Source: Dendrobates tinctorius
Taxonomy: Eukaryota
Direction of reading: 5' to 3'
DNA: 64,000 bases
Assembly: GCF_039654945.1 (NCBI RefSeq)
Contig: NW_027361810.1
Span: forward strand, 186,001-250,000
Made by a program: the position numbers and the translations under genes
The notes under the pieces: model-generated
Told to the model about the DNA's origin: nothing
Seen by the model: the letters and a program-made list of their open reading frames with translations, nothing else
Database searches by the model: none
In this document: in pieces, positions 40,801-64,000 of the stretch
How the letters are laid out: each line of letters starts with the position of its first letter
Numbering within the stretch: position 1 is the stretch's first letter

Positions 40801-43251
40801 CTGCTCAGTAGGTCACGGTGAAGCTGTAATAGAGCGGATTATTACATGGCGGCGGGCGCGGCGCACAATATGGCAGTAATAACCCTCGGGTGTCTGGAGA
40901 GGCCATGACTATAGAGGAGGCGCTGCAGTCAGTCTCCACAGACATGGCCGCTCACCTCACCTTGTCTCTGTAGGAATAGGCCGACATCCCGACTACGATT
41001 TCTGCGACAAAGACCAGAAGCATAATCCCTGTGAACTGAGAGAGGGGAGAGGAGACATGACGGCGCCAACAAACACGGAAAATGGAGGCCAAGTCCAGAG
41101 AGTGCCCCCCTCAGACCGCGCTGCACCTGTACAGGTGAATGGAGCGGCGACCTCACTGGCACTCACTATTCTGCAGCTTCAGAGCTGAGATCTCTCAGCA
41201 TCCCCTGCTGCTTCAGCATCTGCACAGACCTTTGTCCCCCATGTCCATAAGCTTGCTGACTGTTTCCAGGAAAACTAGCAGAATAAGGGTGTGTGCACAC
41301 ACTGCGGATTCTGATGCGGATTGATCCGCCCGGATTTCGCAAAATCCGCAAGTCAAGAGACCTGCGGTTTATCTGTGGATTAGGCTGCGGTTTTGCCCTG
41401 CGGCTTATCACCTCTACAATGGAGGAGATGGTAAATTGCAGCGGAATCCGCAGAAAGAGTTGACATGTCAATTCTTTCTGCAGATTAGAAGCCGAAGCAA
41501 ATCCACGCGGAAACATCTGCACCATCTGCACTGCGGTTTCCATTTCCCATAGGATATTATGGTGCTGTACAACAGCAGAAACTGCTGCAGATCCGCAGCG
41601 TGTGCACACAGCCTAATGAGTGCAGCTGTGGAGTAACGAGGACGCCGCCGTCAGGGTTACGGGGAACATACGATTTTTATCAGGATGAGGTTTTCTTTGA
41701 TTGCAGCCACAGCCCCGAAACCAGAAAGGAAGAAAATGACCATCCCCACGACAGTCAGGACCATGGGGGCGCCGGATGAAGTCTCCACCACGACTACGGA
41801 AACATCCGATAACTTCATCTGTGCCGAGGCCCCGAGACAGATCAGCACAACACCGGTCACCTGACGGAGGACAAGAGCACCGGTCACAGCAAGTAACGGC
41901 TCCGGCAGACACCGGATAAGGCCCCGTGCACACCCGCAGGAGCATACAGCAGGCTGTCTAGGCAGGAGAAGAGACGGCGAAACAGCCAGCACGTCTGCAT
42001 CCCTCACAAATACTGACCGTGTGAACGCGGCCCAAGTGTGTGATCATGGGGGGCCTGGCTCCAGAGACCCCACTGATCCCGAGAAGCCAGCAGCGGCCCG
42101 TATGTCTGCATCACAAATACTGACTGTGTGAACGCGGCCCAAGTGCGTGATTGTGGGGGGGCCTGGCTCCAGACACCCCACTGATCCCGAGAAGCCAGCA
42201 GCGGCCTGTATGTCTGCATCACAAATACTGACTGTGTGAACGCGGCCCAAGTGTGTGATCGTGGGGGGGCCTGGCTCCAGAGACCCCACTGATCCTGAGA
42301 AGCCAGCAGCGGCCTGTATGTCTGCATCACAAATACTGATCATGTGAACGCGGCCCAAGTGTGTGATCGTGGGGGGGGCCTGGCTCCAGAGACCCCACTG
42401 ATCCTGAGAAGCCAGCAGCGGCCTGTATGTCTGCATCACAAATACTGATCATGTGAACGCGGCCCAAGTGTGTGATCGTGGGGGGGGCCTGGCTCCAGAG
42501 ACCCCACTGATCCTGAGAAGCCAGCAGCGGCCTGTATGTCTACATCACAAATACTGACTGTGTGAACGCGGCCCAAGTGCGTGATTGTGGGGGGGGCCTG
42601 GCTCCAGAGACCCCACTGATCCTGAGAAGCCAGCAGCGGCCTGTATGTCTACATCACAAATACTGACTGTGTGAACGCGGCCCAAGTGCGTGATTGTGGG
42701 GGGGGCCGGGCTCCAGAGACCCCACTGATCCTGAGAAGCCAGCAGCGGCCTGTATGTCTGCATCACAAATACTGACTGTGTGAACGCGGCCCAAGTGCGT
42801 GATTGTGGGGGGGCCTGGCTCCAGAGACCCCACTGATCCTGAGAAGCCAGCAGCGGCCTGTATGTCTGCAGCCAGCGCTCACAGACGGAGGGATCCCACT
42901 CTTGGGACTCGCGGGTCTCAGCCATCAGACCCCCAGCAATCACACATTTATCCATCCACTGTAAAACAACCCATTCAACCAATGGAGAAGAAGAGTCTAG
43001 AAACCATAGGAGCATAAACTGCTCTTTACTGCAGGCAGTTTGTTACAATGTATCAGTGCAGGTGACACTTCGGATGATACAGTGCAATACACCCCTCATC
43101 ATTGCCTGTAAACCCAACCCCAGGGGTCATCACCAGGATGGGCCCCAACTTATCCAGAGGAGTGACATGGAGCGCTCACCCAGTAGAAGAGGATGACGCA
43201 GAGCAGCGCAGCCTTCACACACACCACATTGCCCTGGGGCTCCGTCTTCAT
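37778..43251 (-). CDS. CD63-like tetraspanin, complete spliced CDS (7 exons, 243 aa)
   Basis: Exons 43251-43180, 41860-41672, 41035-40961, 40823-40728, 40232-40083, 37996-37913, 37843-37778, all phase 0 with GT-AG. Four TM segments, FQCCGAKNFTDW, VPSSCC, EGC, C-terminal NYVTM*. Resembles CD63 but is too divergent to name as the orthologue. Confidence 0.93.
37913..37996 (-). CDS. Tetraspanin coding exon 6
   Basis: GCVLKMKTWISEHFDVIGAVGIGLGFTQ; 84 nt. Confidence 0.92.
38198..39290. repeat. C-rich minisatellite with alternating short/long units, tetraspanin intron
   Basis: cctacaagtgactgcaccact(c)n +/- aaccatctccacgt. Confidence 0.95.
39553..39800. mobile_element. Harbinger-type MITE
   Basis: GGGCGAGTGCACAC...GTGTGCACATACCC flanked by TAA/TTA. 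Confidence 0.75.
40083..40232 (-). CDS. Tetraspanin coding exon 5 (CCG motif)
   Basis: FQCCGAKNFTDWFNVSSGIYESSVPSSCCRIPRPKCGEDALGHSEGLYQE; 150 nt. Confidence 0.94.
40728..40823 (-). CDS. Tetraspanin coding exon 4
   Basis: LHRDLLSRFMKVMDKYGAEKLVTRAVDGVQQR; 96 nt; cag/gtgagt. Confidence 0.92.
40961..41035 (-). CDS. Tetraspanin coding exon 3 (FTGIMLLVFVAEIVVGMSAYSYRDK)
   Basis: TM3 with conserved Glu; 75 nt; cag/gtgag. Confidence 0.92.
41287..41613. mobile_element. Harbinger-type MITE
   Basis: GGGTGTGTGCACAC...GTGTGCACACAGCC with TAA TSD on both sides. Confidence 0.8.
41672..41860 (-). CDS. Tetraspanin coding exon 2
   Basis: VTGVVLICLGASAQ...GFGAVAAIKENLILIKI, 189 nt, cag/gtatg. Confidence 0.92.
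41985..42870. repeat. Tandem repeat, 108-109-bp unit, about 8 copies
   Basis: tcacaaatactga at 42004, 42111, 42219, 42327, 42436, 42545, 42654, 42763. Confidence 0.95.
43180..43251 (-). CDS. Tetraspanin coding exon 1 (MKTEPQGNVVCVKAALLCVILFYW)
   Basis: ATG at 43251, donor TGG|GTGAGC; an acceptor (ccctctag) 32 nt upstream implies a 5' UTR exon further upstream. Confidence 0.9.
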
Positions 43252-43439: not shown

Positions 43440-45397
43440 TGGTTTTGTTGCAGATTGCGCTGTGGATTTGTCACAGGTTGCGCTGTGGATTTGTCACAGA
43501 TTGCGCTGTGGATTTGTCACAGGTTGCGCTGTGCATTTGTTGCAGATTGCTCTGTTGATTTGTCGCAGGTTGCGCTGTGGATTTGTCGCAGATTGCTCTG
43601 ATGATTTGTTGCAGATTGCGCTGTGGATTTGTCACAGGTTGCGCTGTGGATTTGTCACAGATTGCGCTGTGGATTGGTCGCAAATTGCGCTGTGGATTTG
43701 TCGCAGATTGCGCTGTGCATTTGTTGCAAATTGCACTGTGGATTTGTCACAGATTGCGGTGTGGATTTGTTGCAGATTGCGCTGTGGATTTGTCACAGAT
43801 TGCGGTGTGGATTTGTCACAGATTGCGCTGTGGATTTGTCACAGATTGCGGTGTGGATTTGTCACAGATTGCGCTGTGCATTTGTTGCAGGTTGCACTGT
43901 GGATTAGTCGGAGATTGCGCTATGGATTTGTCGCAGACTGCGCTGTGGATTTGTCGCAGGTTGCGCTTGGATTTGTCGCAGGTTGCGATGTTGATTTGTC
44001 ACAGGTTGCGCTGTGGATTTGTCACAGATTGCGCTGCGGATTGGTCGCAAATTGCGCTGTGGATTTGTCACAGGTTGCGCTGTAGATTTGTCACAGATTG
44101 CGCTGTGGATTTGTCACAGGTTGCGCTGTGCATTTGTTGCAGATTGCTCTGTTGATTTGTCGCAGGTTGCGCTGTGGATTTGTCGCAGATTGCTCTGATG
44201 ATTTGTTGCAGATTGCGCTGTGGATTTGTCACAGATTGCGCTGTGGATTGGTCGCAAATTGCACTGTGGATTTGTCGCAGATTGCGCTGTGCATTTGTTG
44301 CAAATTGCACTGTGGATTTGTCACAGATTGCGGTGTGGATTTGTTGCAGATTGCGCTGTGGATTTGTCACAGATTGCGGTGTGGATTTGTCACAGATTGC
44401 GCTGTGGATTTGTCACAGATTGCGGTGTGGATTTGTCACAGATTGCGCTGTGCATTTGTTGCAGGTTGCACTGTGGATTAGTCGGAGATTGCGCTATGGA
44501 TTTGTCGCAGACTGCGCTGTGGATTTGTCGCAGGTTGCGCTTGGATTTGTCGCAGGTTGCGATGTTGATTTGTCACAGGTTGCGCTGTGGATTTGTCACA
44601 GATTGCGCTGCGGATTGGTCGCAAATTGCGCTGTGGATTTGTCGCAGATTGCGCTGTGCATTTGTTGCAAATTGCACTGTGGATTTGTCGCAGATTGCGG
44701 TGTGGATTTGTTGCAGATTGCGCTGTGGATTTGTCACAGATTGCGGTGTGGATTTGTCACAGATTGCGCTGTGCATTTGTTGCAGGTTGCACTGTGGATT
44801 AGTCAGAGACTGCGCTATGGATTTGTCGCAGACTGCGCTGTGGATTTGTCGCAGGTTGCGCTTGGATTTGTCGCAGGTTGCGATGTTGATTTGTCACAGG
44901 TTGCGCTGTGGATTTGTCACAGATTGCGCTGCGGATTTGTCACAGATTACGTTGTGGATTTGTCACAGGTTGCGCTGTGGATTTGTCGCAGATTGTGCTG
45001 TTGATTTGTCGCAGGTTGCGCTGTGGATTTGACGCAGGTTGCGCTGTTGATTTGTCGCATGTTGCGCTGTGGATTTGTCACAGATTGCGCTTTGCATTTG
45101 TTGCAGATTGCACTGTGGATTTTTCACAGGTTGCGCTGTGGATTTGTTGCAGGTTGCGCTGTGGATCTGTCACAGGTTGTGCTGTGGATTTGTTGCAGGT
45201 TGCGCTGTGGATTTGTCACAGGTTGCGCTGTGGATTTTTCACAAGTTGCGCTGTGGATTTGTTGCAGGTTGCGCTGTGGATCTGTCACAGGTTGTGCTGT
45301 GCATTTGTCGCAGATTGCGCTGTGGATTTATCACAGGTTGCGCTGTGGATTTGTCGCAGATTGTGCTGTGGATTTGTCGAAGGTTGTCCTGTGGACA
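43440..45397. repeat. Minisatellite, 23-bp unit with higher-order duplications
   Basis: gatttgtcacagattgcgctgtg. Confidence 0.97.
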
Positions 45398-45845: not shown

Positions 45846-45884
45846 AATTGGGAAGTCCCTGTCACGTCTGTACTGTCCCACAGC

Positions 45885-48095
45885 AGCGGTCCCTGTCCTT
45901 CCATCTATGTCCCTTCTGTCCCAGGGCAGGGGTCCCTGTCCTTCCGGCTATGTCCCTTCTCTCCCAGGGCAGGGGTCCCTGTCTTTCCGTCTATGGCCCT
46001 TCTGTCCCAGGGCAGGGGTCCCTGTCCTTCTGTCTATGTCCCTTCTGTCCCAGTGCAGGGGTCCCTGTCCTTCCGTCTGTGGCCCTTCTGCCCCAGGGCA
46101 GGGGTCCCTGTCCTTCTGTCTATGTCCCTTCTGTCCCAGTGCAGGGGTCCCTGTCCTTCCGTCTGTGGCCCTTCTGTCCCAGAGCAGGGGTCCCTGTCCT
46201 TCCGGCTATGTCCCTTCTCTCCCAGGGCAGGGGTCCCTGTCCTTCCGTCTATGGCCCTTCTGTCCCAGGGCAGGGGTCCCTGTCCTTCCCTCTATGGCCC
46301 TTCTGTCCTAGGGCAGGGGTCCCTGTCCTTCCATCTATGTCCCTCCTGTCCCAGGGCAGGGGTCCCTGTCCTTCCGTCTATGGCCCTTCTGTCCCATGGC
46401 AGGGGTCCCTGTCCTTCCGTCCATGTCCCTTCTATCCCAGGGCAGGGGTCGCTGTCCTTCTGTCTATGTCTCTTCTGTCCCAGGGCAGGGGTCCCTGTCC
46501 TTCCGTCTATGACTCTTCTCTCCCAGGGCAGGGATCCGTGTCCTTCCATCTATGTCCCTTCTGTCCCAGGTCAGGGGTCCCTATCTTTCCGTCTATGGCC
46601 CTTCTGTCCCATGGCAGGGGTCCCTGTCCTTCCGTCCATGTCCCTTCTATCCCAGGGCAGGGGTCGCTGTCCTTCTGTCTATGTCTCTTCTGTCCCAGGG
46701 CAGGGGTCCCTGTCCTTCCGTCCATGTCCCTTCTGTCCCAGGGCAGGGATCCCTGTCCTTCTGTCTATGTCTCTTCTGTCCCAGGGCAGAGGTCCGAGTC
46801 CTTCCATCTATGTCCCTTCTGTCCCAGGTCAGGGGTCCCTGTCTTTCCATCCATGTCCCTTCTGTCCCATGGCAGGGGTCCCTGTCCTTCCGTCCATGTC
46901 CCTTCTGTCCCAGGTCAGGGGTCCCTGTCTTTCCGTCTATGGCCCTTTTGTCCCATGGCAGGGGTCCCTGTACTTCCATCCATGTCCCTTCTACCCCAGG
47001 GCAGGGGTCCCTGTCCTTCCGTCCATGTCCCTTCTCTCCCAGGGCAGGGATCCCTGTCCTTCTGTCTATGACTCTTCTCTCCCAGGGCAGGGGTCCATGT
47101 CCTTCCATCTATGTCCCTCCTGTCCCAGGTCAGGGGTCCCTGTCTTTCCGTCTATCTCCCTCCTGTCCCAGGTCAGGGATCCCTGTCTTTCCGTCTATGG
47201 CCCTTTTGTCCCATGGCAGGGGTCCCTGTTCTTCCATCCATGTCCCTTCTGTCCCATGGCAGGGGTCGCTGTCCTTCTGTCTATGTCTCTTCTGTCCCAG
47301 GGCAGGGGTCCCTGTCCTTCCGTCCATGTCCCTTCTGTCCCAGGGCAGGGATCCCTGTCCTTCTGTCTATGTCTCTTCTGTCCCAGGGCAGAGGTCCGTG
47401 TCCTTCCATCTATGTCCCTTCTGTCCCAGGTCAGGGGTCCCTGTCTTTCCATCCATGTCCCTTCTGTCCCATGGCAGGGGTCCCTGTCCTTCCTTCCATG
47501 TCCCTTCTGTCCCAGGTCAGGGGTCCCTGTCTTTCCGTCTATGGCCCTTTTGTCCCATGGCAGGGGTCCCTGTACTTCCATCCATGTCCCTTCTACCCCA
47601 GGGCAGGGGTCCCTGTCCTTCTGTCCATGTCCCTTCTCTCCCAGGGCAGGGATCCCTGTCCTTCTGTCTATGACTCTTCTCTCCCAGGGCAGGGGTCCGT
47701 GTCTTTCCGTCTATCTCCCTCCTGTCCCAGGTCAGGGATCCCTGTCTTTCCGTCTATGGCCCTTTTGTCCCATGGCAGGGGTCCCTGTCCTTCCATCCAT
47801 GTCCCTTCTGTCCCAGGGCAGGGGTCCCTGTCCTTCCGTCCATGTCCCTTCTGTCCCAGGGCAGGGATCCCTGTCCTTCTGTCTATGACTCTTCTCTCCC
47901 AGGGCAGGGATCCCTGTCCTTCTGTCTATGACTCTTCTCTCCCAGGGCAGGGGTCCGTGTCCTTCCATCTATGTCCCTCCTGTCCCAGGTCAGGGGTCCC
48001 TGTCTTTCCGTCTATCTCCCTCCTGTCCCAGGGCAGGGGTCCCTGTCTTTCCATCCATGTCCCTTCAGTCACATGGCAGGGGTCCCTGTCCTTCC
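45885..48095. repeat. Minisatellite, 43-44-bp unit
   Basis: ggcaggggtccctgtccttccgtctatgtcccttctgtcccag. Confidence 0.97.
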
Positions 48096-50370: not shown

Positions 50371-52636
50371 AATATACCTCCGGAGAGACGCCTCTGAGGA
50401 TAAGAGGTATCCGGGAACCTGTGTGGTCGTCACAGATAGATAACAGACACTAATCTGTGTTAGGCACACCAGGCTCAGCGAGGACCGTGGGTTCTATGAA
50501 GCTGAAAGGTGGTCGGACGGCGCACGGGGTGCTGCATGTTACCAACTATCTGAGATTTGGTTTATGTTGTATATTAATAAACCGAATGGACTTGTTTTAA
50601 CTCTTAGTGTCCCAGCATATTCCTCGAAGACCAGCCAAGTGAGTACTGCCCGTCCACAGATAGTGGAGATGTGTTACAGTCATGTGGAGCCGTGCAGAGC
50701 TTGCGGAGCCTCGCTGAGCCTTGCAGAGCGGTGCGGAGCCTCGCTGTCACGTGCCCCGTCCTGTGTGACACGGCCAGCAGGCCGGTAACTAATACAACAG
50801 GACACGGCACGTGTAATTGTCCAGTGTGACGCGGCCCGCAGGCCGATAACTAATACAACAAGACAAAGGGGATAGGGAAACATTTACAACGGTGGGCCCT
50901 ACGATAGGGAACGGGGGATGTGGAGACCTTCTGCACTCCCCTGAGTCAGTGTCCCTAACGTTCCTTATGCCAGTTCCGCACCGGGCGCCGCTCAGGAACC
51001 TGTAGCCCTGGCACACCCTACACCTATCCCTTGCTAGGGAGCTGGGTGGTGCAGGCACTGGCCCCACCGCTGCACTAACACCAACATGAGGAAAAGTGAC
51101 AAACGGAAACACGTAGCTTTGCTCTGATGCACTTGCTCCTGGCAACAGAGAACAACACCTGACTGCATCTTCCTCCACCGTGTCCAACACCTGGAAGCAG
51201 CTTTACAGCAACAGCGTCCAGCACTGAGTGCCCCCTTGGAGCAACAAAGTCCAGCACCTGAGTGCAGCTCTCCAGCAACCGAGTCCGGCAAACTGAGTGC
51301 AGCTCTCAGTAACAGAGTCCAGCAAACTTAGTGCAGCTTTACACCATAGCTGCCACTCCACAAAGCTTTGCAGGAATTCTTCACTGACACCATAGCTGCC
51401 ACTCCACCATGCTTTACACGAACTCCTCACTGACACCATGGCTGCCACTCCAGGACTCTGAATGAGCCACCCTGGACTCTCCTCCAGCTCCCATCCAGCT
51501 CCTTCCTTCACCCAGGATGGTTGGAAAGCCCAACAATAATAATATCACCAACATCAGTGAGTACTACTGACACACCTTTATAGAGCAAACACACCTGTTA
51601 GTGATTCCCGTGCAATCACTCTAACCACCACCGGGGGCAAACTATCTCTAAAAACACCAGTGCAATGACCATACTGGCCACCAGGCAAAACTATCTCTAA
51701 GCACAAGTGCAATGACCATACTGGCCACCGGGGTAAAACTATCCTGAGCAAAACAGCTCACAGGAAAAAAAAGGTTACTTGTGCATTTAATCTGTCAGAT
51801 CCACCCTGGATCATGACAGTACCCTCCCCTTAATGAGGGGCCTCTGGACCCTCAAGACCACTCCTCATCAGGGAACCACCTACAGCGGGGACGCCCAGAT
51901 CCAGAGTTCACCCCACCACTAACTGACACTTCAGGTTTATGACAAAAGCACCGCTGGTATTGGCAATATGTTCTGGAGCCACCACTCATCGCGCTTACCT
52001 GGGGAACGAGTTGTGTATGTTCGGTATGAGCTGATCAGACTCCGCAACACACTTCCACAGGATGTTTTTTGGTGGCCACCCATACATGCTCGTTCACACA
52101 CAGGTCCGGACCTGAACGTTTATTGCCACACATTCGTTTGTCATAATTCGGTGAACTCATTCTGGAATCGACAACAGGCGTCCCCCTGTGTCACCACACT
52201 CACCCCCCCGCAATTCACCAAGGGACACCACCCTCCAACCCTTTACACCATGAGGTCTGCGCCTCCCAGGGTTGGCTAATGGCGAGGGTTGAGATTTGTC
52301 CTGTGATAAAACACTCCGGGATCGGCTTTGCTGGGGTCAAAGGTCACGTGCGTTCAGCATGAAACTCAGGTGTAGAGCTGGGATTCGGGTGTAACTGACC
52401 CTGGGTCAGGTTTATTAACGGTGAAAGCAATGCAAAAGGAAATAAAACATAAAACAAATCCTTGCCTGTCCGGCACTAACTAAACAAGGTACAACCTAAC
52501 TACCAACTGGTGGGCTTCTCCCGTCCAGCCAAACCACAGTTGCAGTGGGCACTGCTTCCACTCACATGTGTCTCTCACACAGACAGGCTCTCTGTGTTCC
52601 CAGGCTGAGACACTCACACAACCACCTGGCATCCTT

Positions 52637-55600
52637 TTATATCCACCTCCCATTATTCATTAGGAAGCAGGTGATATACTGACCAGACTTGGCCACATAG
52701 GAAAGGAATCTGGGCGAGATATACCTGCCCTCATCCACTATTCCCACATGATTCTCACATATCCCCCCCCCCTGCTCAGACCACTCCGGTCGAGCAATGA
52801 CACCCGCCAAACAGTGCACTCGGGACAGGGCATCTGCATTTCCCATCTGTACCCCTGGGCGGTGCTCCACCGTAAAAGTGTAGGCCTGCAGGGCAAGGAA
52901 CCACCGGGTCACCCGGCTATTCCGTTCCTTGTGCAAGTGCATCCACTTGAGAGGGGCATGGTCAGTGATCAGCCTGAACTTTCGGCCCACCAGGTAATAT
53001 TTGAGGGCCTCTAGAGCCCACTTAATGGCGAGGCACTCTTTTTCTACGACTGCATACCTTTGCTCGTGTTTATTCAGCTTCCTGCTGAGATAGAGGACTG
53101 GGTGTTCCACTCCGTCCCTCACTTGTGAGAGTACGGCCCCGATACGGTATCAGAGGCATCCGTTTGTACCACAAACTCGCTGCGGAAGTCCGGAGTCACC
53201 AGTACGGGCTGAGAGCAAAGTGCCCGTTTCAGGCTATGGAAGGCTTCTTCAGCCGCTAAACTCCATTTAATCATGACGGAGTCTTTCCCTTTTGTAAGAT
53301 CCGTCAGGGGGGTAGCGATGGCTGCAAAATTGGGTATGAACCGGCGATAATAACCGGCGATCCCCAGGAAGGCTTGCACCTGCTTCTTGTTGACAGGTTG
53401 CGGCCAGTCCTGAACCGCCTGAATCTTATCAACCTGGGGTTTAACAACACCCCTCCCAATTACATACCCCAAATACCGGGCTTCTTCTAGCCCGACGTGA
53501 CATTTCTTGGGGTTCGTGGTTAGACCTGCCTCCCACAGATCGTCAATCACAGCTTGTACTTTCTGGAGATGAGTCTCCCAGTCCAAGCTGTAAATGACAA
53601 TGTCATCCAAATAGGCTGAAGCGTACCGCCTATGTGGCCTCAGGACTCGATCCATCAGTCTCTGGAAGGTCACCGGTGCTCCGTGCAGTCCAAACGGCAT
53701 ATACACATACTGAAATAAACCTTCCGGCGTAGCAAATGCCGTCTTTTCTCTGGCAGCCTCCGCCAGAGGGATCTGCCAATACCCCTTTGTTAGGTCTAGG
53801 GTCGTAATATACCGGGCTTTTCCTAACCGATCTATTAACTCGTCGACCCGGGGCATAGGGTAGGCATCAAATTTTGAGACCGCATTCAGTTTCCTGAAGT
53901 CATTGCAGAACCGGATGGTGCCGTCCGGTTTAGGAATTAGCACAATCGGGCTGGACCAAGCACTGTGCGATTCCTCAATGACACCTAACTCTAACATTGC
54001 CTTCACTTCTCGGGAAACGGCTTCACGGCGCTTCCGGGATTCGGTAGGGCTTTACGTGAACTGTGACACCAGGTTCCGTTACGATGTCATGTTTCATTAG
54101 CGTAGTCTGCCCGGGTTTTTCTGAGAAAAACTTTTGGTTGTGAAGTAGAAACTGCCTGACCTCAGTCTTTTGCCGCTCCGAGAGAGTCTCTGCAACCCGT
54201 ACCTCCGGTACGGTATGCGAGCAGACGGGACGGGCCAGCTCCGCTGACAAGGCAGACCGATCTTTCCAGGGTTTTATCAGATTTACATGATAAATCTGTT
54301 CAGGTTTCCGTTTACCTGCCTGGTATACTTTGTAGTTTACTTCACCAACTCTTTCCTTGATCTCAAAGGGGCCCTGCCACTTTGCCAGGAACTTACTGTC
54401 CACCGTGGGGACCAGGATCAACACCCTATCTCCGGGTGCAAACGTACGGATCTTGGCGCCCCTATCATAGATTCTTTTTTGGGCTCCTTGGGCCTGTATC
54501 ATGTGTTCTTTGACGATAGGCATAACAGCCGCAATACGGTCCTGCATTTGTGTGACGTGATCTATCACTGTTTTAAACGGAGTGACCTGACCCTCCCAGG
54601 TTTCTTTTGCAACGTCTAACAGTCCGCGAGGACGTCGGGCGTACAATAACTCGAAAGGCGAGAACCCCGTGGAAGACTGGGGTACTTCCCTGATGGCAAA
54701 AAGCAAATACGGAAGTAAATAGTCCCAGTTCTTCCCATCCTTGTCTATCACCTTTCTCAGCATCTGCTTCAGAGTTTTATTGAACCGTTCGACCAACCCG
54801 TCTGTTTGAGGGTGATACACGGATGTGCGTAACGGTTCGATTTGTAACAATCGGCAGAGCTCCTTCATTACCCTGGACATAAAGGGGGTCCCCTGGTCGG
54901 TGACTATCTGTTTTGGTATACCGACCCGACTAAACACATGCACCAGTTCCTTGGCAATCGTCTTAGTGGCCGTGTTACGCAAAGGGATGGCCTCCGGGTA
55001 ACGAGTGGCATAATCCAAGATGACCAGGATATGTTGGTGTCCACGTGCAGACCGTGGAAGGGGCCCCACTAAATCCATCCCAATCCTCTCAAACGGGACT
55101 TCAATAATAGGTAGGGGTACCAAAGGGCTACAGAACCAGGGCTTAGGTGCAGAGGCTTGGCAGTCAGGACAAGACTCACAATATACACGAATATCATGAT
55201 GCATGCCTGGCCAAACAAAACAGTGTAATATCCTTTCGGTGGTTTTCTGGAATCCCAGGTGACCTCCCATCACATGTCTGTGGGCCAGGTCCAGCACCTG
55301 CCGCCGGTAGGGTTTTGGCACGACTAATAGTTGTGTCACATCGGCGGGCATGCCCGCCGATGCCCCTGCTGCTGCGGCGCGCGCCACAGCGTTACCTCTC
55401 CAGCGCGCTCCCGTCCGGTCACGCGCCCGCCGTCCACTCGGCCTCACGGCGGCTCCTGGCTCCCGCCTCCTGGTTCGCGCACGCCACCTCCCACGCTCTC
55501 TCTCCAGCGGTGGGCGGCGCTGAGGGGCGGGTCCAGGGGACGCACTTCCGGGGGTGTGCTGTATTTCAGGCGTCCTCGCTGTCAGGAGGACGCCTGATGA

Positions 55601-57725
55601 TTGTGTAGATTCTCTGCACCCTCTGGCCTCTACAGTTTTGCTGTAGTTAACCTCTCTCTGCCTGTATCGCTCTGCCGTCCTCAGTCTCGTGTCTCCCTTC
55701 CACCCAGTCTGCCTGGGCGCTGTCTTCCCTCCATCCCCTGTGCCCTCCTCTGTCTCCAGTCCGCCTTGGCCTTCCACGTGCCTTTCTCCCGTAGTATTCC
55801 ATCCCCTGTGCCACTGGTCCTTGCTCGTTTTCGCACCGTCACCTTCCCAGTCCTTTTGTCCGTGGAGCCGTCCCTCTTGGTTCCGGCTGTCGCGCCTCCG
55901 TCCTCTGTGGCCCTGCCCCTAACGATCCCTGTATAGGGGTCGGTCTTCACCTGGCGTGCTCGGCCCAGGGGCTCCGGATCCGTGACCCAGAGGGTCCACT
56001 CTCTAACGTAGAGTTCCCCTAAGTATTACAAGTTGCACCGTATCTTCCCCCTTTTTCTCTATCTGATAGAGTAAATCATTCTCCAGAACCATGTAAGGAT
56101 ATGCCAGCCTAGAGCCAGGTTTTACGGGTACCCCATTTATCACTTTTACATTTGTCCTAGCCTGAGAAAGGGTAGGATCCTTTATTTGCTCGCTTTGGAA
56201 GTCATCTTTCTGAACTTCTAAATCCGGCAAACGGGGAGGTGGACGGCTGTCGGCCTCCTCCTCTTCCCCGGTCTCCTCCGTATCACCCGCCATGACTGAA
56301 AACGGGAACTGTAGGTCATTTCCCCGCAGACCCTTCCCCCGAGTCTTCCGGGGAGACCTCTTCCAGGGGTTCGGGACCCACACGCGCCCTGGGAGAAGAA
56401 TCATGTACACTATTACCCGAGGGCATCAACTGATTCTCCCACAATTGCCAGAAGTGGGGAAAATCCCGGCCCAGGATAACATCATGCAATAACGCCGGGA
56501 CGAGTCCCACTTTATGTTGCACAGACCCATAGGAAGTAGTAATGCATATGACCGTGGTGAGGTACGAACAGGTGTCTCCATGCACACACGTTACAGAAAA
56601 TTTGTCTGATGGTCCAGTCGGGGCTGACACCAGACTGGCCTTCACCAGAGTCACCACACTTCCCGAGTCTAACAATGCCACCACATTTTTGCCATCAACA
56701 GTTAAATCACACAAGTGTTTTTCCACATCCTTTTGACCGGCATTCACACTCACTACCCGTGCAACCATAGACATGCGGTTTTTAGAGTCTGTGACGTCGC
56801 ACTGCATGGGTTCAGTAGTGACCGGACAGTTCGCAGCAATATGTCCCATCTCTTGGCAGCGGAAACACCTAACGGGCCCCTTGCTTAGACCATAGTTCGT
56901 TACTCTCGGCCTCGCAGTGCGGGCAGTCCCGTTTTCCTCCCCCACTGTCTTAGGGATTTTTCCATCTCCCCTACTCCCTGGAACAGTCTTACCGGTTCCA
57001 CGTGGAGATGATGAAGAACGAGGTGGGGTAGCGTCGTCTCGGAGTCCTTCCGCCACGGAGTAACGTTCAACCAGATCCACCAGTTGATCTGCCGTCGTAG
57101 GATTTCCATGGCTTACCCACTTCCTCAGGGCTGGCGGTAGAGCTCTCAGGTACTTGTCCATGACGACTCTCTGGATTATCTCTGGTGCTGTCAACACCTC
57201 GGGTTGTAGCCACTTCTTCATCACGTGGATCAGGTCGAACATCTGGGACCACGGTGGTTTATCCGGCTGATAAGTCCATTGTTGCACTCTCTGTGCACGG
57301 ACAGCGGTCGTCACTCCCAGCCGGGCCAAGATCTCGGCTTTCAATTTGTCAAAGTCCTGCGCAGCTTCAGGCTCTAAGTCATAATAAGCCTTTTGGGCCT
57401 CACCGGAAAGAAACGGGGCAATCAGGCCGGCCCATCGTGCCTTCGGCCATTTTTCTCACACCGCCGTCCGTTCAAACGTGGTCAGGTATGCCTCGACGTC
57501 ATCTTCGGTCGTCATCTTCTGCCAGTACCGACTCACGTGAATCACTCTCGACTCGGCTTCCAGGTTAACCTCAGGTAAGCTTGCCAAGCGCTGCGCCACC
57601 TGCTGGAGAAGCGAACGATCGGTAACTGTCATGTCCACCAACTCCTTCAGCTGGGCCATCATCACCCGATTAGCTTCTTGCTGGACGGCGGTGGACTGTA
57701 CCAGCGCTTTCACCACGTCCTCCAT
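52637..57725 (-). pseudogene. Disrupted gag-pol of the Gmr1-type element
   Basis: ORF pieces 57725-57456 and 57344-56316 share a frame, split by one TGA (likely CGA>TGA); frameshifts near 56350, 54020 and 53130; a solo LTR interrupts the frame before the integrase. Confidence 0.9.
55334..56030 (+). mobile_element. Solo LTR inserted in pol of the Gmr1-type element
   Basis: 697 bp, TGTCAC...ATTACA, flanked by exact 5-bp TSD AGTTG (55329-33, 56031-35); removing it restores EDTVQLLVVPKPYR. Orientation is inferred. Confidence 0.88.
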
Positions 57726-60700
57726 GCTTGCAACGTGATGCCCGCGTTCTCCACCACAATGTGATAAAACACTCCAGGATCGGCTTTGCTGGGGTCAAAG
57801 GTCACGTGCGTTCAGCATGAAACTCAGGCGCAGAGCCGGGGTCCGGGTATAACTGACACTGGGTCAGGTTTATTAATGGTGAAAGCAATGCAAAAGGAAA
57901 TAAAACATAAAACAAATCCTTGCCTGTCCGGCACTAACTAAACAATGGACAACCTAACTACCAACTGGCGGGCTTCTCCCGTCCAGCCAAACCACAGTTG
58001 CAGTGGGCACTGCTTCCACTCACGTGTGTCTCTCACACAGACAGGCTCTCTGTGTTCCCAGGCTGAGACACTCACACAACCACCTGGCATCCTTTTATAT
58101 CCACCTCCCATTATTCATTAGTCACCAGGTGCGATACTGACCAGACTAGGCCACATAGGAAAGGAATCTGGCCGAGATATACCTGCCCTCATCCACTATT
58201 CCCACGTGATTCTCACAGCCCCTACTCCCCCGCAGCGCACCTGCTGCTCATACCGGATAGGGAGGGGCCTGGGATATGGAGGAAAAATACACTCCCTGGT
58301 CGCCTTCCTCCACATGACCAGGAGGGGGCAGCTTCTTCGGTGGTATGGAAGATTTGGCGTGAGCCCCACGGGCTATAACATCAGTCTGCTCACTACCAGG
58401 ACGTACCCCTTCACCTCGGGGAACCGCAGACAGCACCATGGGGACACCAACTCCACCCACCTGTCTGGGTGTGTCCGTCAGCATGAGCAAATCCCGCTCC
58501 CCAGCAGCGACTCTAGGGGCCTCCATTGCCAGCCGCTATTTGATTTTCTGGTTAAGACAGAGGGAAGGCCCCAGACCCTGAATACCGCTGCTGGAACTGC
58601 TTACACACCATGCAGCTCCTCACTCACCTCAGTGTGGCCCAGCAGCAAATGCTCACAGGTCTGAACATGGCCTGAGGCTCACCAGAAAAAAAAAAAGTAT
58701 GGTTGGTGATAATGTCACGTGCCCGGTCCTGTGTGACACGGCCAGCAGGCCGGTAACTAATACAACAAGACAAAGGGGGATAGGGAAACATTTACAATGG
58801 AGGGCCCTGCAATAGGGAATGTGGAGACTCCCCTGAGTCAGTGTCCCTAACGCTCCTAACGTTCCCTATGCCGGTTCCGCACCGGACACCGCTCAGGAAC
58901 CTGTAGCCCTGGCACACCCTACACCTATCCCTTGCTAGGGAGCTGGGTGGTGCAGGCACTGGCCCCACCGCTGCACTAACACCAACCTGAGGAAAAGTGA
59001 CAAACGGAAACACTTAGCTTTGCTCTGATGCACTTGCTCCTGGCAACAAAGAACAACACCTGACTGCATCTTCCTCCACCGGGTCCAACACCTTGGTGCA
59101 GCTTTACAGCAACAGCGTCCAGCACTGAGTGCCGCCTTGGAGCAACAGAGTCCAGCACCTGAGTGCAGCTGTCCAGCAACCGAGTCCGGCAAACTGAGTG
59201 CAGCTCTCAGTAACAGAGTCCAGCAAACTGAGTGCAGCTCTACACCATAGCTGCCACTCCACCAATCTTTGCAGGAATTCTTCACTGACACCATAGCTGC
59301 CACTCCACCATACTTTACACGAATTCCTCGCTAACACCATGGCTGCCACTCCAGGACTCTGAATGAGCCGCCCTGGACTCTCCTCCAGCTCCCATCCAGC
59401 TCCTTCCTTCACCCAGGATGGTTGGAAAGCCCAACAATAATAATAATATCACCAACGTCAGTGAGCACTACTGACACACATTTATAGAGCAAACACACCT
59501 GTTAGTGATTCCCGTGCAATCACTCTAACCACCACCGGAGGCAAACTATCTTTAAAAACACCAGTGCAATGACTATACTGGCCACCGGGCAAAACTACCT
59601 CTAAGCACAAGTGCAATGACCATACTGGCCACCGGGCAAAACTACCTCTAAGCACAAGTGCAATGACCATACTGGCCACCGGGGTAAAACTATCCTGAGC
59701 AAAACAGCTCACAGGAAAAAAAAGGTTACTTGTGCATTTAATCTGTCAGATCCACCCTGGATCATGACACTCGCTGTGAGGAACTGCTGGGGCAGATAGA
59801 CTGCCGTGTACAGGCAGTGAGGGGCCTGAGAGGGCCGTGGACAGTCCACGGCGTGCACCCCAAGGAGGGATGGTTGCCTGAAAAGGGAAGTAGTCCCAAA
59901 AAGGGGTGGTGACCCAAACAGGGGTGGTTGCCCAAAAAGGGGCAGTGGCGAATGCGCCAAGGGACTGTTGCCGGGAACAGTGTTCGAACAGCGCGTGTCT
60001 GGTATCCTGTATCAGTTATCCATTTGACAAGACAGCACAGAGGTGTTCTGTGGAAGTCAATGGGGAGAGCGTGGCCGGACTTCTGGACTCAGGGTGCCCA
60101 GTGACCCTGGTGAGCACCACGCTCCCTGTCTATCTGATTCCCGGAAGGAAGATGGAAGTCCACTGCGTTCATGGGGTCCCTAGGGATTATCCGGTGTCCA
60201 GGGTAATCATTGAGACGCCCACGATTATCACCAGCCATGATGTCCCTGTAGTCCTGGACTTGCCATACCGTGTTGTAATAGGCCGGGACTTTAAATTGTT
60301 TTGGGACTTGTGGGAGACGCATTAAGAGGAGGACGTAGCGCCCCTCAGGTTGATATCCCAGAGTTAGGGGTGACCGGGAAAAAGTGTGTGTCTGGCCAAT
60401 TCAGGGACTTAGATGGGTTGACCAAATGTGTGAAAACGGGGTAGATACAGGAAAGGGATCCAACACCTGTTTTAGTGGGGACTTGTTGTTCCTGGGTGAC
60501 AGGGTGAGTAGTGGTGACTCCCATTCAGACAGACTCAAGGGGGGAAAGAGTGCGGTTAGGTGGACCCGAGCTAAAACGGCCAGTCTTCCTCTCAGCGCCA
60601 GGGACACGGCGGCCGCAGAGAGGCAGGACAGGCTACACCCTCTGAGAAGAGGGATGAAGAAGAGACAGGGTCAGGGGCCGCCAGGCTGATTTCCTGGATA

Positions 60701-60899: not shown

Positions 60900-63800
60900 A
60901 AGTATTGATGATCGGATCTATTATAGGGCGGAGTATCGATGATCGGATCTATTATAGGGCAGAGTATTGATTACCAGATCTATTATAGGGCGGAGTATCG
61001 ATGATCGGATCTATTATAGGGCAGAGTATTGATTACCAGATCTATTATAGGGCGGAGTATTGATTACCGGATCTATTATAGGGCGGAGTATTGATTACCG
61101 GATCTATTATAGGGAGGAGTATTGATTACCGGATCTATTATAGGGAGGAGTATTGATGATCGGATCTATTATAGGGAGGAGTATCGATGATCGGATCTAT
61201 TATAGGGCAGAGTATTGATTACCGGATCTATTATAGGGCGGAGTATTGATTACCGGATCTATTATAGGGCGGAGTATTGATTACCGGATCTATTATAGGG
61301 AGGAGTATTGATTACCGGATCTATTATAGGGAGGAGTATCGATGATCGGATCTATTATAGGGCGGAGTATCGATTACCGGATCTATTATAGGGAGGAGTA
61401 TTGATTACCGGATCTATTATAGGGCGGAGTATTGATTACCGGATCTATTATAGGGCGGAGTATTGATTACCGGATCTATTATAGGGCGGAGTATTGATTA
61501 CCGGATCTATTATAGGGCGGAGTATCGATGATCGGATCTATTATAGGGCAGAGTATCGATTACCGGATCTATTATAGGGCGGAGTATCGATTACCGGATC
61601 TATTATAGGGCGGAGTATTGATTACCGGATCTATTATAGGGCAGAGTATTGATTACCGGATCTAATATAGGGCGGAGTATTGATTACCGGATCTATTATA
61701 GGGCGGAGTATTGATTACCGGATCTATTATAGGGAGGAGTATTGATTACCGGATCTATTATAGGGCGGAGTATTGATTACCGGATCTATTATAGGGCGGA
61801 GTATCGATTACCGGATCTATTATAGGGAGGAGTATCGATGATCGGATCTATTATAGAGCGGAGTATCGATGATCGGATCTATTATAGGGCGGCGTATCGA
61901 TATTCGGATCTATTATAGGGCGGAGTATCGATGATCGGATCTATTATAGGGCGGAATATCGATGATCGGATCTATTATAGGGCGGAGTATCAATGATCGG
62001 ATCTATTATAGGGCGGAGTATCGATGATCGGATCTATTATAGGGCGGAGTATCGATGATCGGATCTATTATAGGGCGGAGTATTGATTATCGGATCTATT
62101 ATAGGGCGGAGTATTGATGATCTGATCTATTATAGGGAGGAGTATTGATGATCGGATCTATTATAGGGCGGAGTATGGATGATCGGATCTATTATAGGGC
62201 GGAGTATCGATGATCGGATCTATTATAGGGAGGAGTATCGATGATCGGATCTATTATAGGGCGGAGTATCGATGATCGGATCTATTATAGGGCGGAGTAT
62301 CGATGATCGGATCTATTATAGGGCGGAGTATCGATGATCGGATCTATTATAGGGCGGAGTATCGATGATCGGATCTATTATAGGGCGGAGTATCGATGAT
62401 CGGATCTATTATAGGGCGGAGTATTGATTATCGGATCTATTATAGGGCGGAGTATTGATGATCGGATCTATTATAGGGCGGAGTATTGATGATCGGATCT
62501 ATTATAGGGAGGAGTATTGATGATCGGATCTATTATAGGGCGGAGTATCGATGATCGGATCTATTATAGGGCGGAGTATCGATGATCGGATCTATTATAG
62601 GGCGGAGTATCGATTACCGGATCTATTATAGGGCGGAGTATTGATTACCGGATCTATTATAGGGCGGAGTATTGATTACTGGATTTATTATAGGGCGGAG
62701 TATTGATGATCGGATCTATTATAGGGAGGAGTATGGATGATCGGATCTATTATAGGGCGGAGTATCGATGATCGGATCTATTATAGGGCGGAGTATTGAT
62801 GATCGGATCTATTATAGGGAGGAGTATTGATGATCGGATCTATTATAGGGAGGAGTATTGATGATCGGATCTATTATAGGGAGGAGTATTGATGATCGGA
62901 TCTATTATAGGGCGGAGTATTGATGATCGGATCTATTATAGGGCGGAGTATAGATGATCGGATCTATTATAGGGCGGAGTATCGATGATCGGATCTATTA
63001 TAGGGCGGAGTATCGATGATCGGATCTATTATAGGGCGGAGTATCGATGATCGTATTTATTATAGGGCGGAGTATCGATGATCGGATCTATTATAGGGAG
63101 GAGTATCGATGATCGGATCTATTATAGGGTGGAGTATCGATGATCGGATCTATTATAGGGCGGAGTATCGATGATCGGATCTATTATAGGGTGGAGTATC
63201 GATGATCGGATCTATTATAGGGAGGAGTATCGATGATCGGATCTATTATAGGGCGGAGTATCGATGATCGGATCTATTATAGGGCGGAGTATCGATGATC
63301 GGATCTATTATAGGACGGAGTATTGATGATCGGATCTATTATAGGGAGGAGTATCGATGATCGGATCTATTATAGGGCGGAGTATCGATGATCGGATCTA
63401 TTATAGGGCGGAGTATCGATGATCGGATCTATTATAGGGCGGAGTATCGATGATCGGATCTATTATAGGGTGGAGTATCGATGATCGGATCTATTATAGG
63501 GCGGAGTATCGATGATCGGATCTATTATAGGGCGGAGTATCGATGATCGTATTTATTATAGGGCGGAGTATCGATGATCGGATCTATTATAGGGAGGAGT
63601 ATCGATGATCGGATCTATTATAGGGTGGAGTATCGATGATCGGATCTATTATAGGGCGGAGTATCGATGATCGGATCTATTATAGGGTGGAGTATCGATG
63701 ATCGGATCTATTATAGGGAGGAGTATCGATGATCGGATCTATTATAGGGCGGAGTATCGATGATCGGATCTATTATAGGGCGGAGTATCGATGATCGGAT

Positions 63801-64000
63801 CTATTATAGGACGGAGTATTGATGATCGGATCTATTATAGGGAGGAGTATCGATGATCGGATCTATTATAGGGCGGAGTATCGATGATCGGATCTATTAT
63901 AGGGCGGAGTATCGATGATCGGATCTATTATAGGGCGGAGTATCGATGATCGGATCTATTATAGGGTGGAGTATCGATGATCGGATCTATTATAGGGAGG
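60900..64000. repeat. Satellite/minisatellite, 31/32-bp unit, runs off the window end
   Basis: gagtatcgatgatcggatctattatagggcg and variant gagtattgattaccggatctattatagggcg. Confidence 0.97.

What the first reader, a model, noticed from the sequence alone, without database searches (positions are those of the whole stretch)
58690..59490. Self-priming (tRNA-independent) reverse-transcription signal in a non-autonomous LTR element
Seen: on the element's (-) strand, the sequence just after the 5' LTR is not a TGG tRNA PBS. It is TATCACCAAC (58711-58702) followed by a T-run. Its exact 10-nt complement GTTGGTGATA lies inside the LTR (59456-59447) and starts 30 nt downstream of the first base of a TATAAA box (59486-59481), which is the expected transcription start. 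The other LTR has the same geometry (TATA 51582, complement from 51552). Established: S. pombe Tf1 primes cDNA synthesis by folding the first ~11 nt of its own mRNA onto the PBS, and this mechanism was proposed for vertebrate Tf1/sushi-group elements. Inference: this element keeps only about 1 kb of decayed internal sequence but retains both LTRs, the self-primer, the PPT and a clean TSD, so it may belong to a self-priming non-autonomous family mobilised in trans.
Basis: partly seen in the sequence, partly recalled or inferred. Interest (0 to 1): 0.75.

Follow-up and report, generated by a model that had tools for sequence, protein, structure and literature searches.

The report
Self-priming signature in frog LTR element
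An old, non-coding LTR retrotransposon in this frog genome has, where a tRNA primer site should be, a 10-base site that pairs with the predicted first 10 bases of its own transcript; this is the known Tf1/sushi way of starting reverse transcription, so it is a real but ordinary new example.

Summary
On the minus strand, the 5' LTR (59769-58713) is followed by one T and then TATCACCAAC (58711-58702). There is no TGG. The exact complement GTTGGTGATA (59456-59447) starts 30 nt after the first base of the LTR's only TATAAA, at a pyrimidine/purine step. The 3' LTR has the same geometry.

A complement of 10 nt or more anywhere in a shuffled LTR has p=0.018. At that position, p is about 1-2e-4. ViennaRNA closes the roughly 750-nt R-U5 with this helix (pair probability 0.7-1.0 in most settings).

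The LTR is very high copy in this frog. The leader next to the PBS is also multi-copy.

Three things could not be shown:
- the transcription start;
- covariation between copies, because no other copy could be fetched;
- that the ~1-kb interior is a family trait and not a unique deletion.

The interior is split by a nested 5.9-kb Gmr1-like element that has no matching target-site duplication. No polyadenylation signal lies downstream of the putative start.

Self-priming is already described from fungi to vertebrates. This scan has already noted it many times in this genome on other DNA, including ~3.2-kb non-autonomous elements. Verdict: a new member of a known kind, of low interest.

The parts
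58713..59769 (-). 5' LTR of the outer element (1057 nt, TGTCATG...CGTGACA). It lacks the ~61-74-nt tandem duplication near the U5 end that the 3' LTR and most genomic copies carry.
   Evidence: duplication joints 58771->58726
59559..59692 (-). 47-bp tandem repeat (2.8 copies) upstream of the TATA box. It sits where U3 enhancer repeats sit in other LTRs.
59481..59486 (-). TATAAA, the only TATAWA in the LTR
59447..59456 (-). GTTGGTGATA, the candidate self-primer and predicted first 10 nt of the transcript (C at -1, G at +1)
58702..58711 (-). TATCACCAAC, the candidate primer-binding site, one nt (T 58712) after the LTR's terminal CA
58686..58696 (-). 11-T run, 5 nt after the PBS; role unknown
58218..58701 (-). 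5' part of the non-coding interior (leader). It is multi-copy in the genome.
52302..58217 (-). Nested Gmr1-like Ty3/gypsy element in the same orientation. It is not part of the self-priming element. LTRs are 458 bp. The PBS begins with TGG (TGGTGGAGAACGCGGGCATC). Domain order is gag(SCAN, CCHC)-PR-IN-RT-RH. The reading frames are broken. There is no matching TSD (GGGGC vs GGACA).
51832..52301 (-). 3' part of the non-coding interior
51819..51831 (-). Polypurine tract AAGGGGAGGG plus TAC, directly before the 3' LTR
50745..51818 (-). 3' LTR (1074 nt), with TATAAA from 51582 and GTTGGTGATA at 51552..51543. K2P distance to the 5' LTR is 0.036, plus 7 indels.
59770..59774 (-). Target-site duplication GCGAG, upstream copy
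50740..50744 (-). Target-site duplication GCGAG, downstream copy. It lies in a short 30-bp tandem repeat of the host DNA.

Best explanation
The outer element is a dead copy of a high-copy frog LTR retrotransposon family that starts reverse transcription by Tf1/sushi-type self-priming.

Proposed mechanism (all inferred by analogy with Tf1; none shown here):
1. RNA polymerase II starts about 30 nt after the TATAAA, at or within a few nt of 59456.
2. The first 10 nt of the RNA (GUUGGUGAUA) fold back over the ~745-nt R-U5 and pair with UAUCACCAAC just after the LTR.
3. The RNase H of a reverse transcriptase supplied in trans cuts after about nt 10.
4. The freed 3' end is extended through the spacer U and U5.

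This copy has no coding capacity of its own, so a copy of this structure could only have moved with proteins from an autonomous, probably sushi-type, element.

Shown here: the anatomy, the complementarity and its position, its improbability by chance, the thermodynamic plausibility, and the multi-copy status of LTR and leader.

Inferred: the transcription start, the cleavage, the trans-mobilisation, and the clade.
For: - The anatomy is complete: LTRs, a 5-bp TSD, a PPT and TG..CA ends.
- There is no TGG in the 20 nt after the LTR, so a tRNA 3' end cannot pair there.
- The LTRs differ by only 3.6%. The PBS therefore cannot be a decayed tRNA site.
- The 10-nt exact complement begins 30 nt after the first T of the only TATAAA, at a C/G (5' LTR) or T/G (3' LTR) pyrimidine-purine step.
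- The helix ends exactly there, because position -1 is mismatched.
- Chance of 10 nt or more anywhere in the LTR is 0.018. At that place it is about 1-2e-4.
- The helix is in the MFE structure, with pair probabilities 0.83-1.0 for leaders ending at 58690 or 58650. It stays at 0.66-0.91 for starts 2-14 nt upstream, and vanishes for a start inside the primer.
- The 10-mer is identical in both LTRs, although the base at -1 differs between them.
- None of the 40 best-supported differences from other genomic copies falls in either 10-mer, although 180 more were not shown.
- The LTR termini TGTCATG / CGTGACA fit the Sushi-clade motifs TGTYANR / CNTNACA (PMC3601003).
- Self-priming is established for Tf1 and predicted from fungi to vertebrates (PMC7175516, PMC4600332, PMC6317226).
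Against: - There is no measured transcription start. The two runs guessed to be RNA gave only contigs, and these run through 59456.
- No AATAAA or ATTAAA lies between the putative start and the LTR end in either LTR. The only ATTAAA sits at LTR position 28, in U3. An R region therefore cannot be defined.
- With the leader extended to 58600, the helix probability falls to 0.27.
- R-U5 would be about 745 nt, which is long by my recollection of Tf1.
- The pairing is 10 nt, not 11.
- The LTR termini also fit the rGmr1 motif, so they do not discriminate between clades.
- No pol sequence is present to place the element in a tree.
- Covariation was not tested.
- The minus strand of the LTR is G/T-rich, and GTTGGTG-like words recur in it.
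Confidence: 0.65

Rival explanations
1. The complementarity is a coincidence of a G/T-rich LTR. The element is primed by something else: an internal or half tRNA as in copia-type elements, or another small RNA. Alternatively, it is copied only through read-through or recombination.
For: - 1.8% of shuffled LTRs give 10 nt or more somewhere.
- A second site with similar predicted duplex energy exists in this 5' LTR.
- The first-stage reader screened many elements, so some chance hits are expected.
- Half-tRNA primer sites are known in other LTR elements (PMC6317226).
- The host tRNA set was not available for a check. The window itself holds no tRNA gene.
Against: - The position at TATA+30, at a pyrimidine-purine step, in both LTRs, brings the chance figure to about 1e-4.
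- The second site is a private mutation of this copy.
- No Rfam family matches the region.
- According to unchecked notes of this scan, self-priming signatures recur in this genome.
Confidence: 0.2
2. The self-priming signal is real, but this copy is not a member of a non-autonomous family. It was a full-length autonomous element that lost gag-pol in a copy-specific deletion. One route would be recombination between two nested Gmr1-like insertions, leaving one chimeric insertion.
For: - The nested element has no matching TSD: GGGGC against GGACA.
- Its LTRs are at least as diverged (K2P 0.047) as the outer LTRs (0.036), which is odd for a simple later insertion.
- Contiguity of the two interior halves in other copies was not tested.
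Against: - The leader up to 58400 is multi-copy, at depths comparable to parts of the LTR.
- The element minus the insertion is 3109 bp, or about 3170-3183 bp with the U5 duplication. This is close to the sizes of other self-priming non-autonomous elements noted in this genome: 3183, 3193 and 3235 letters. These are unchecked notes, and it is not shown that they are the same family.
- The difference in LTR divergence is within sampling error.
- Two same-family insertions in the same orientation within one element would be needed.
Confidence: 0.3

Closest known systems
Tf1 (Schizosaccharomyces pombe) and the Tf1/sushi group of Ty3/gypsy chromoviruses, including vertebrate sushi-type elements
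   Same: - No tRNA-type PBS.
- The site next to the 5' LTR is complementary to the start of the element's own transcript.
- 5-bp TSD.
- TG..CA LTR ends that fit the Sushi-clade motifs.
   Different: - The pairing is 10 nt, against 11 nt in Tf1.
- The predicted R-U5 of about 745 nt is long by my recollection of Tf1.
- There is no gag-pol, so clade membership cannot be shown.
- There is no recognisable polyadenylation signal, whereas Sushi LTRs have a clear AATAAA near the 3' end (PMC3601003).
- Nothing was tested experimentally.
Tj1 (S. japonicus), Tcn1-clade chromoviruses and TAR Ty1/copia elements of plants, where self-priming is predicted from sequence
   Same: The evidence is of the same kind and the same level: a PBS complementary to an upstream LTR segment taken to be the 5' end of the mRNA.
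   Different: Those are autonomous elements placed by RT/IN phylogeny. This one is non-coding and comes from an amphibian.
Non-autonomous LTR retrotransposons (LARD / TRIM type)
   Same: Two LTRs, a PBS, a PPT and a TSD around a short non-coding interior, with high copy number.
   Different: The described LARD and TRIM elements that I know of carry tRNA-type or undefined primer sites. My search of the paper library found no description of a self-priming non-autonomous family. Here, the family-wide nature of the interior is not yet shown.
Gmr1-like Ty3/gypsy elements (the nested neighbour)
   Same: The outer LTR ends also fit the rGmr1 motifs TGTNANR / CGTNACA.
   Different: The nested Gmr1-like copy has a PBS that begins with TGG, not a self-complementary one. 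The LTR sequences are unrelated.

Membership tests
Tf1/sushi-type self-priming LTR retrotransposons | No PBS complementary to a tRNA 3' end (no TGG next to the 5' LTR) | tested here: met
   The 20 nt after the LTR are TTATCACCAACCATACTTTT, with no TGG. LTR divergence of 3.6% excludes decay of a former tRNA site.
Tf1/sushi-type self-priming LTR retrotransposons | The PBS is complementary to about 11 nt inside the LTR, downstream of the promoter | tested here: met
   A 10-nt exact complement lies 30 nt after the only TATAAA, in both LTRs. p is about 1-2e-4.
Tf1/sushi-type self-priming LTR retrotransposons | That complement is the actual 5' end of the element's mRNA | not testable with these tools
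   Only contigs of public runs were available. They cannot show RNA starts, and they run across 59456.
Tf1/sushi-type self-priming LTR retrotransposons | The PBS and the 5' end covary among copies or sister families | not testable with these tools
   No other copy could be fetched. The window has none. Protein-word searches of LTR ORFs were blank. The 18-mer scans gave chance hits only.
Tf1/sushi-type self-priming LTR retrotransposons | RT/IN place the element in the Tf1/sushi chromovirus clade (chromodomain integrase) | tested here: inconclusive
   The interior has no Pfam-recognisable remnant in any minus-strand piece of 33 aa or more that was scanned. Nothing is available to place in a tree.
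Tf1/sushi-type self-priming LTR retrotransposons | LTR end motifs of the Sushi clade (TGTYANR ... CNTNACA) and a 5-bp TSD | tested here: met
   TGTCATG ... CGTGACA and GCGAG/GCGAG, with motifs from PMC3601003. The ends also fit rGmr1, so this feature does not discriminate.
Non-autonomous LTR retrotransposon family (LARD-like) | Complete cis signals (2 LTRs, PBS, PPT, TSD) without coding capacity | tested here: met
   The longest minus-strand open stretch of the interior is 95 aa, with no family, Rfam or Atlas match.
Non-autonomous LTR retrotransposon family (LARD-like) | Many copies share the same non-coding interior | tested here: inconclusive
   The leader 58400-58711 is multi-copy, and contigs bridge the LTR/leader junction at 86-89% identity (records 2, 10, 11).
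Non-autonomous LTR retrotransposon family (LARD-like) | An autonomous partner with related LTR ends and the same priming signal | not testable with these tools
   No access to the rest of the genome. Only unchecked scan notes mention sushi-type chromoviruses with self-priming signatures.
Half-tRNA-primed LTR elements (copia-type) | The PBS is complementary to an internal tRNA segment | not testable with these tools
   No host tRNA set was available. The window holds no tRNA gene.

The most novel reading that the evidence does not exclude
This is one copy of a very abundant, purely non-coding LTR family of about 3.1-3.2 kb. Under this reading the family has kept only the cis signals of Tf1/sushi-type self-priming and spreads as a parasite of sushi-type chromoviruses in frogs. 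In the paper library searched here, that would be the first described non-autonomous family whose link to its helper is a self-primer and not a shared tRNA site.
Probability: 0.4. Interest if true: 0.35.

Novelty: new member of a known kind. Interest (0 to 1): 0.2.

Why it matters
It adds an amphibian example to the list of LTR elements predicted to prime reverse transcription from their own 5' end. If the non-coding structure is family-wide, it shows that parasitic LTR elements can hitch-hike on self-priming helpers. For annotating this frog genome, it explains why an abundant LTR family has no tRNA-type PBS. It does not open a new mechanism or a long-standing question.

Tried and rejected
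- Fetching other copies to test covariation failed by every route.
  - Word-based protein searches with the 55-aa ORF that spans the LTR end, PBS and leader, and with the 122-aa LTR ORF, found nothing.
  - Exact 18-mer scans of the metagenome and viral collections gave 60 loci. None resembles the element beyond the 18-mer, so they are chance hits.
  - The window has no other copy and no other LTR pair.
  - The findings look-up by sequence was blank.
- Pfam on ten interior pieces, Rfam on 50500-60000 and the ESM Atlas on the 92-aa leader ORF found nothing meaningful.
- I considered the opposite orientation and rejected it. On the plus strand there is no TATA, no PPT adjacent to an LTR, and no TGG after the LTR.
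- I considered a decayed tRNA PBS and rejected it, because the LTRs are only 3.6% diverged.
- I considered the second site at 58986 as an alternative primer and rejected it. It is a private change of this LTR and has no promoter upstream.

Full report
**What is there**

Read on the minus strand, the region 59774-50740 is one LTR retrotransposon insertion.
- The 5' LTR is 59769-58713 and the 3' LTR is 51818-50745.
- Both LTRs begin TGTCATG and end CGTGACA.
- The insertion is flanked by a 5-bp duplication, GCGAG, at 59774-59770 and 50744-50740.
- A polypurine tract, AAGGGGAGGG, lies 3 nt before the 3' LTR at 51831-51822.

In a global alignment the LTRs differ at 35 of 997 aligned positions (K2P 0.036) and by seven indels. 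The largest is a 61-nt gap. It reflects a tandem duplication near the U5 end that the 3' LTR has and the 5' LTR lacks. Joints and loose ends in public contigs show that most genomic copies carry this duplication.

The interior that belongs to this element is only 495 + 483 nt. A 5.9-kb element is nested between these two pieces at 58217-52302, in the same orientation.
- It has its own 458-bp LTRs.
- Its PBS, TGGTGGAGAACGCGGGCATC, begins with TGG. From my memory of vertebrate tRNA-Ala, it differs from that tRNA's 3' end at one position.
- Its Pfam domain order is gag(SCAN, zinc knuckle)-protease-integrase-RT-RNase H. From what I know of the literature, that order is the hallmark of Gmr1-like Ty3/gypsy elements.

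**The observation**

- After the terminal CA of the 5' LTR comes one T (58712), then TATCACCAAC (58711-58702), then CCATAC and an 11-T run.
- The 20 nt after the LTR contain no TGG.
- The exact complement GTTGGTGATA lies at 59456-59447.
- Its first base is 30 nt from the first T of TATAAA (59486-59481), which is the only TATAWA in the LTR.
- The base before it is C in the 5' LTR and T in the 3' LTR, so the complement starts at a pyrimidine/purine step. From general knowledge, that step and the 30-nt spacing are what a vertebrate TATA promoter predicts for +1.
- The pairing stops exactly there, because position -1 faces a mismatch.
- Upstream of the TATA box lies a 47-bp tandem repeat, as in many U3 regions.
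- The 3' LTR repeats the geometry (51582; 51552-51543).

**Chance**

I ran 20,000 dinucleotide-preserving shuffles of the LTR. In 1.76% of them, a complement of 10 nt or more to the sequence starting 0-4 nt after the LTR occurred somewhere. That is more often than naive counting gives, because this strand of the LTR is G/T-rich.

Requiring the match to begin 25-35 nt after the single TATA box multiplies this by about 0.01, giving 1-2e-4. A composition-based estimate gives 1.3e-4. For one element that is convincing. For a reader who screens many elements it is good but not overwhelming.

**Folding**

- With ViennaRNA, a transcript from 59456 to 58690 or to 58650 is closed in its minimum-free-energy structure by exactly this 10-bp helix. 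Pair probabilities are 0.83-1.0.
- The helix persists at 0.66-0.91 if the start is moved 2-14 nt upstream. It disappears if the start lies inside the 10-mer.
- Extending the leader to 58600 lowers the probability to 0.27.

The fold is therefore supportive but context-dependent, as expected for ~800-nt predictions.

This 5' LTR holds a second site of similar duplex energy (GGTTGGTG, 58986-58979). The first G of that site is a private change of this copy. The 3' LTR and nearly all other genomic copies have T there (place 58987).

**Copies elsewhere**

I laid contigs of four public runs of the same organism on 58400-59850, at 80% likeness or more.
- The LTR is very high copy: 6,199 pieces in one run.
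- The leader next to the PBS is also multi-copy.
- Contigs bridge the LTR/leader junction at 86-89% identity (records 2, 10, 11).
- Forty differences were listed out of 220. None falls in either 10-mer. The flanking positions 59459 and 59480 are private changes of this copy.

This is weak evidence of conservation. About 0.7 private changes would be expected in 20 nt, by my estimate from the K2P.

No contig covers both sites, and contigs cannot show RNA ends. Neither covariation nor the transcription start could be tested. All attempts to fetch other copies failed.

**What argues against**

- Neither LTR has AATAAA or ATTAAA between the putative start and its end. The only ATTAAA is at LTR position 28, in U3, and is followed by a T-rich stretch. 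If that were the poly(A) signal, the transcript would have no R region.
- The R/U5 border is therefore undefined. This is the main anatomical gap in the model, although this copy is old and the family-wide sequence at these places is not known.
- R-U5 would be about 745 nt.
- The interior has no recognisable protein or RNA family, so the element cannot be placed in a tree.
- Its LTR ends fit the published Sushi-clade motifs (TGTYANR/CNTNACA) but equally fit the rGmr1 motifs (PMC3601003).

**Non-autonomous family or unique deletion?**

- The nested Gmr1-like element lacks a matching target-site duplication: GGGGC against GGACA.
- Its LTRs are not less diverged than the outer ones (0.047 against 0.036, within sampling error).
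- That pattern is what recombination between two insertions, or a flanking deletion, would leave. Such an event could have removed a former gag-pol.
- Against this, the leader is abundant in the genome.
- The element's size without the insertion is 3109 bp, or about 3.17-3.18 kb with the U5 duplication. This is close to three other 'non-autonomous self-priming' elements noted by this scan in the same genome: 3183, 3193 and 3235 letters. Those notes are unchecked, and I could not show that they are the same family.

I put the family reading at roughly 0.6-0.7.

**Comparison with what is known**

- The first 11 nt of Tf1 RNA pair with its PBS, and RNase H cuts between nt 11 and 12 (PMC7175516).
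- The same signature has been used to predict self-priming in Tj1 (PMC4600332), in Tf1/sushi elements 'from yeast and vertebrates', in plant Tcn1 chromoviruses and in TAR copia elements, where it was predicted for 12% of the plant elements surveyed (PMC6317226).
- This scan holds 85 notes on self-priming in this frog genome. One followed-up case reports ten related elements with other letters. These are unchecked leads.

The mechanism is therefore known, and its occurrence in a vertebrate is expected. The one modestly new aspect is that this copy, and probably its family, is non-coding. My search of the paper library found no description of a non-autonomous self-priming LTR family.

**Verdict**

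It is a new member of a known kind, of low interest.

Noticed in passing
window 52302-58217 (minus strand): A nested Gmr1-like Ty3/gypsy element with copia-like domain order (PR-IN-RT-RH) and a SCAN-type capsid domain in gag. Its PBS is TGGTGGAGAACGCGGGCATC. The frames are broken between gag-PR, IN, RT and RH. There is no matching TSD (GGGGC / GGACA). Its LTR divergence (K2P 0.047) is not lower than that of the element it sits in, so it is possibly a recombinant of two insertions.
   Followed up: partly
window 50745-50818, and joints 58771->58726: A tandem duplication of the last ~60-74 nt of U5 is present in the 3' LTR and in most genomic copies but absent from this 5' LTR. The two LTRs of one insertion must have been identical, so the 5' LTR probably lost one unit by slippage.
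   Followed up: partly
window 59417-59424 and 58699-58706: The word CCAACCAT of the PBS region recurs in the predicted R region 33-40 nt after the putative start. It could pair locally with the 5' GTTGG, or with GGTTGG at 58981-58986. This might compete with the PBS helix. Its meaning is unknown.
   Followed up: no
window 59722-59747: ATTAAA followed by a T8 run and a GT-rich stretch lies at the very start of the LTR (U3). It looks like a poly(A) signal in the wrong place for a retroelement with the proposed start.
   Followed up: no
window 60901-63997, 43440-45395, 45873-48095, 42004-42870: Large satellite arrays flank the element: a 31-bp unit x ~100, a 23-bp unit x 85, a 43-bp unit x 52 and a 109-bp unit x 8. 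The region looks heterochromatic.
   Followed up: no
window 50687-50746: The element inserted into a short 30-bp host tandem repeat that itself contains GCGAG. A TSD match is therefore slightly less improbable by chance than usual.
   Followed up: no
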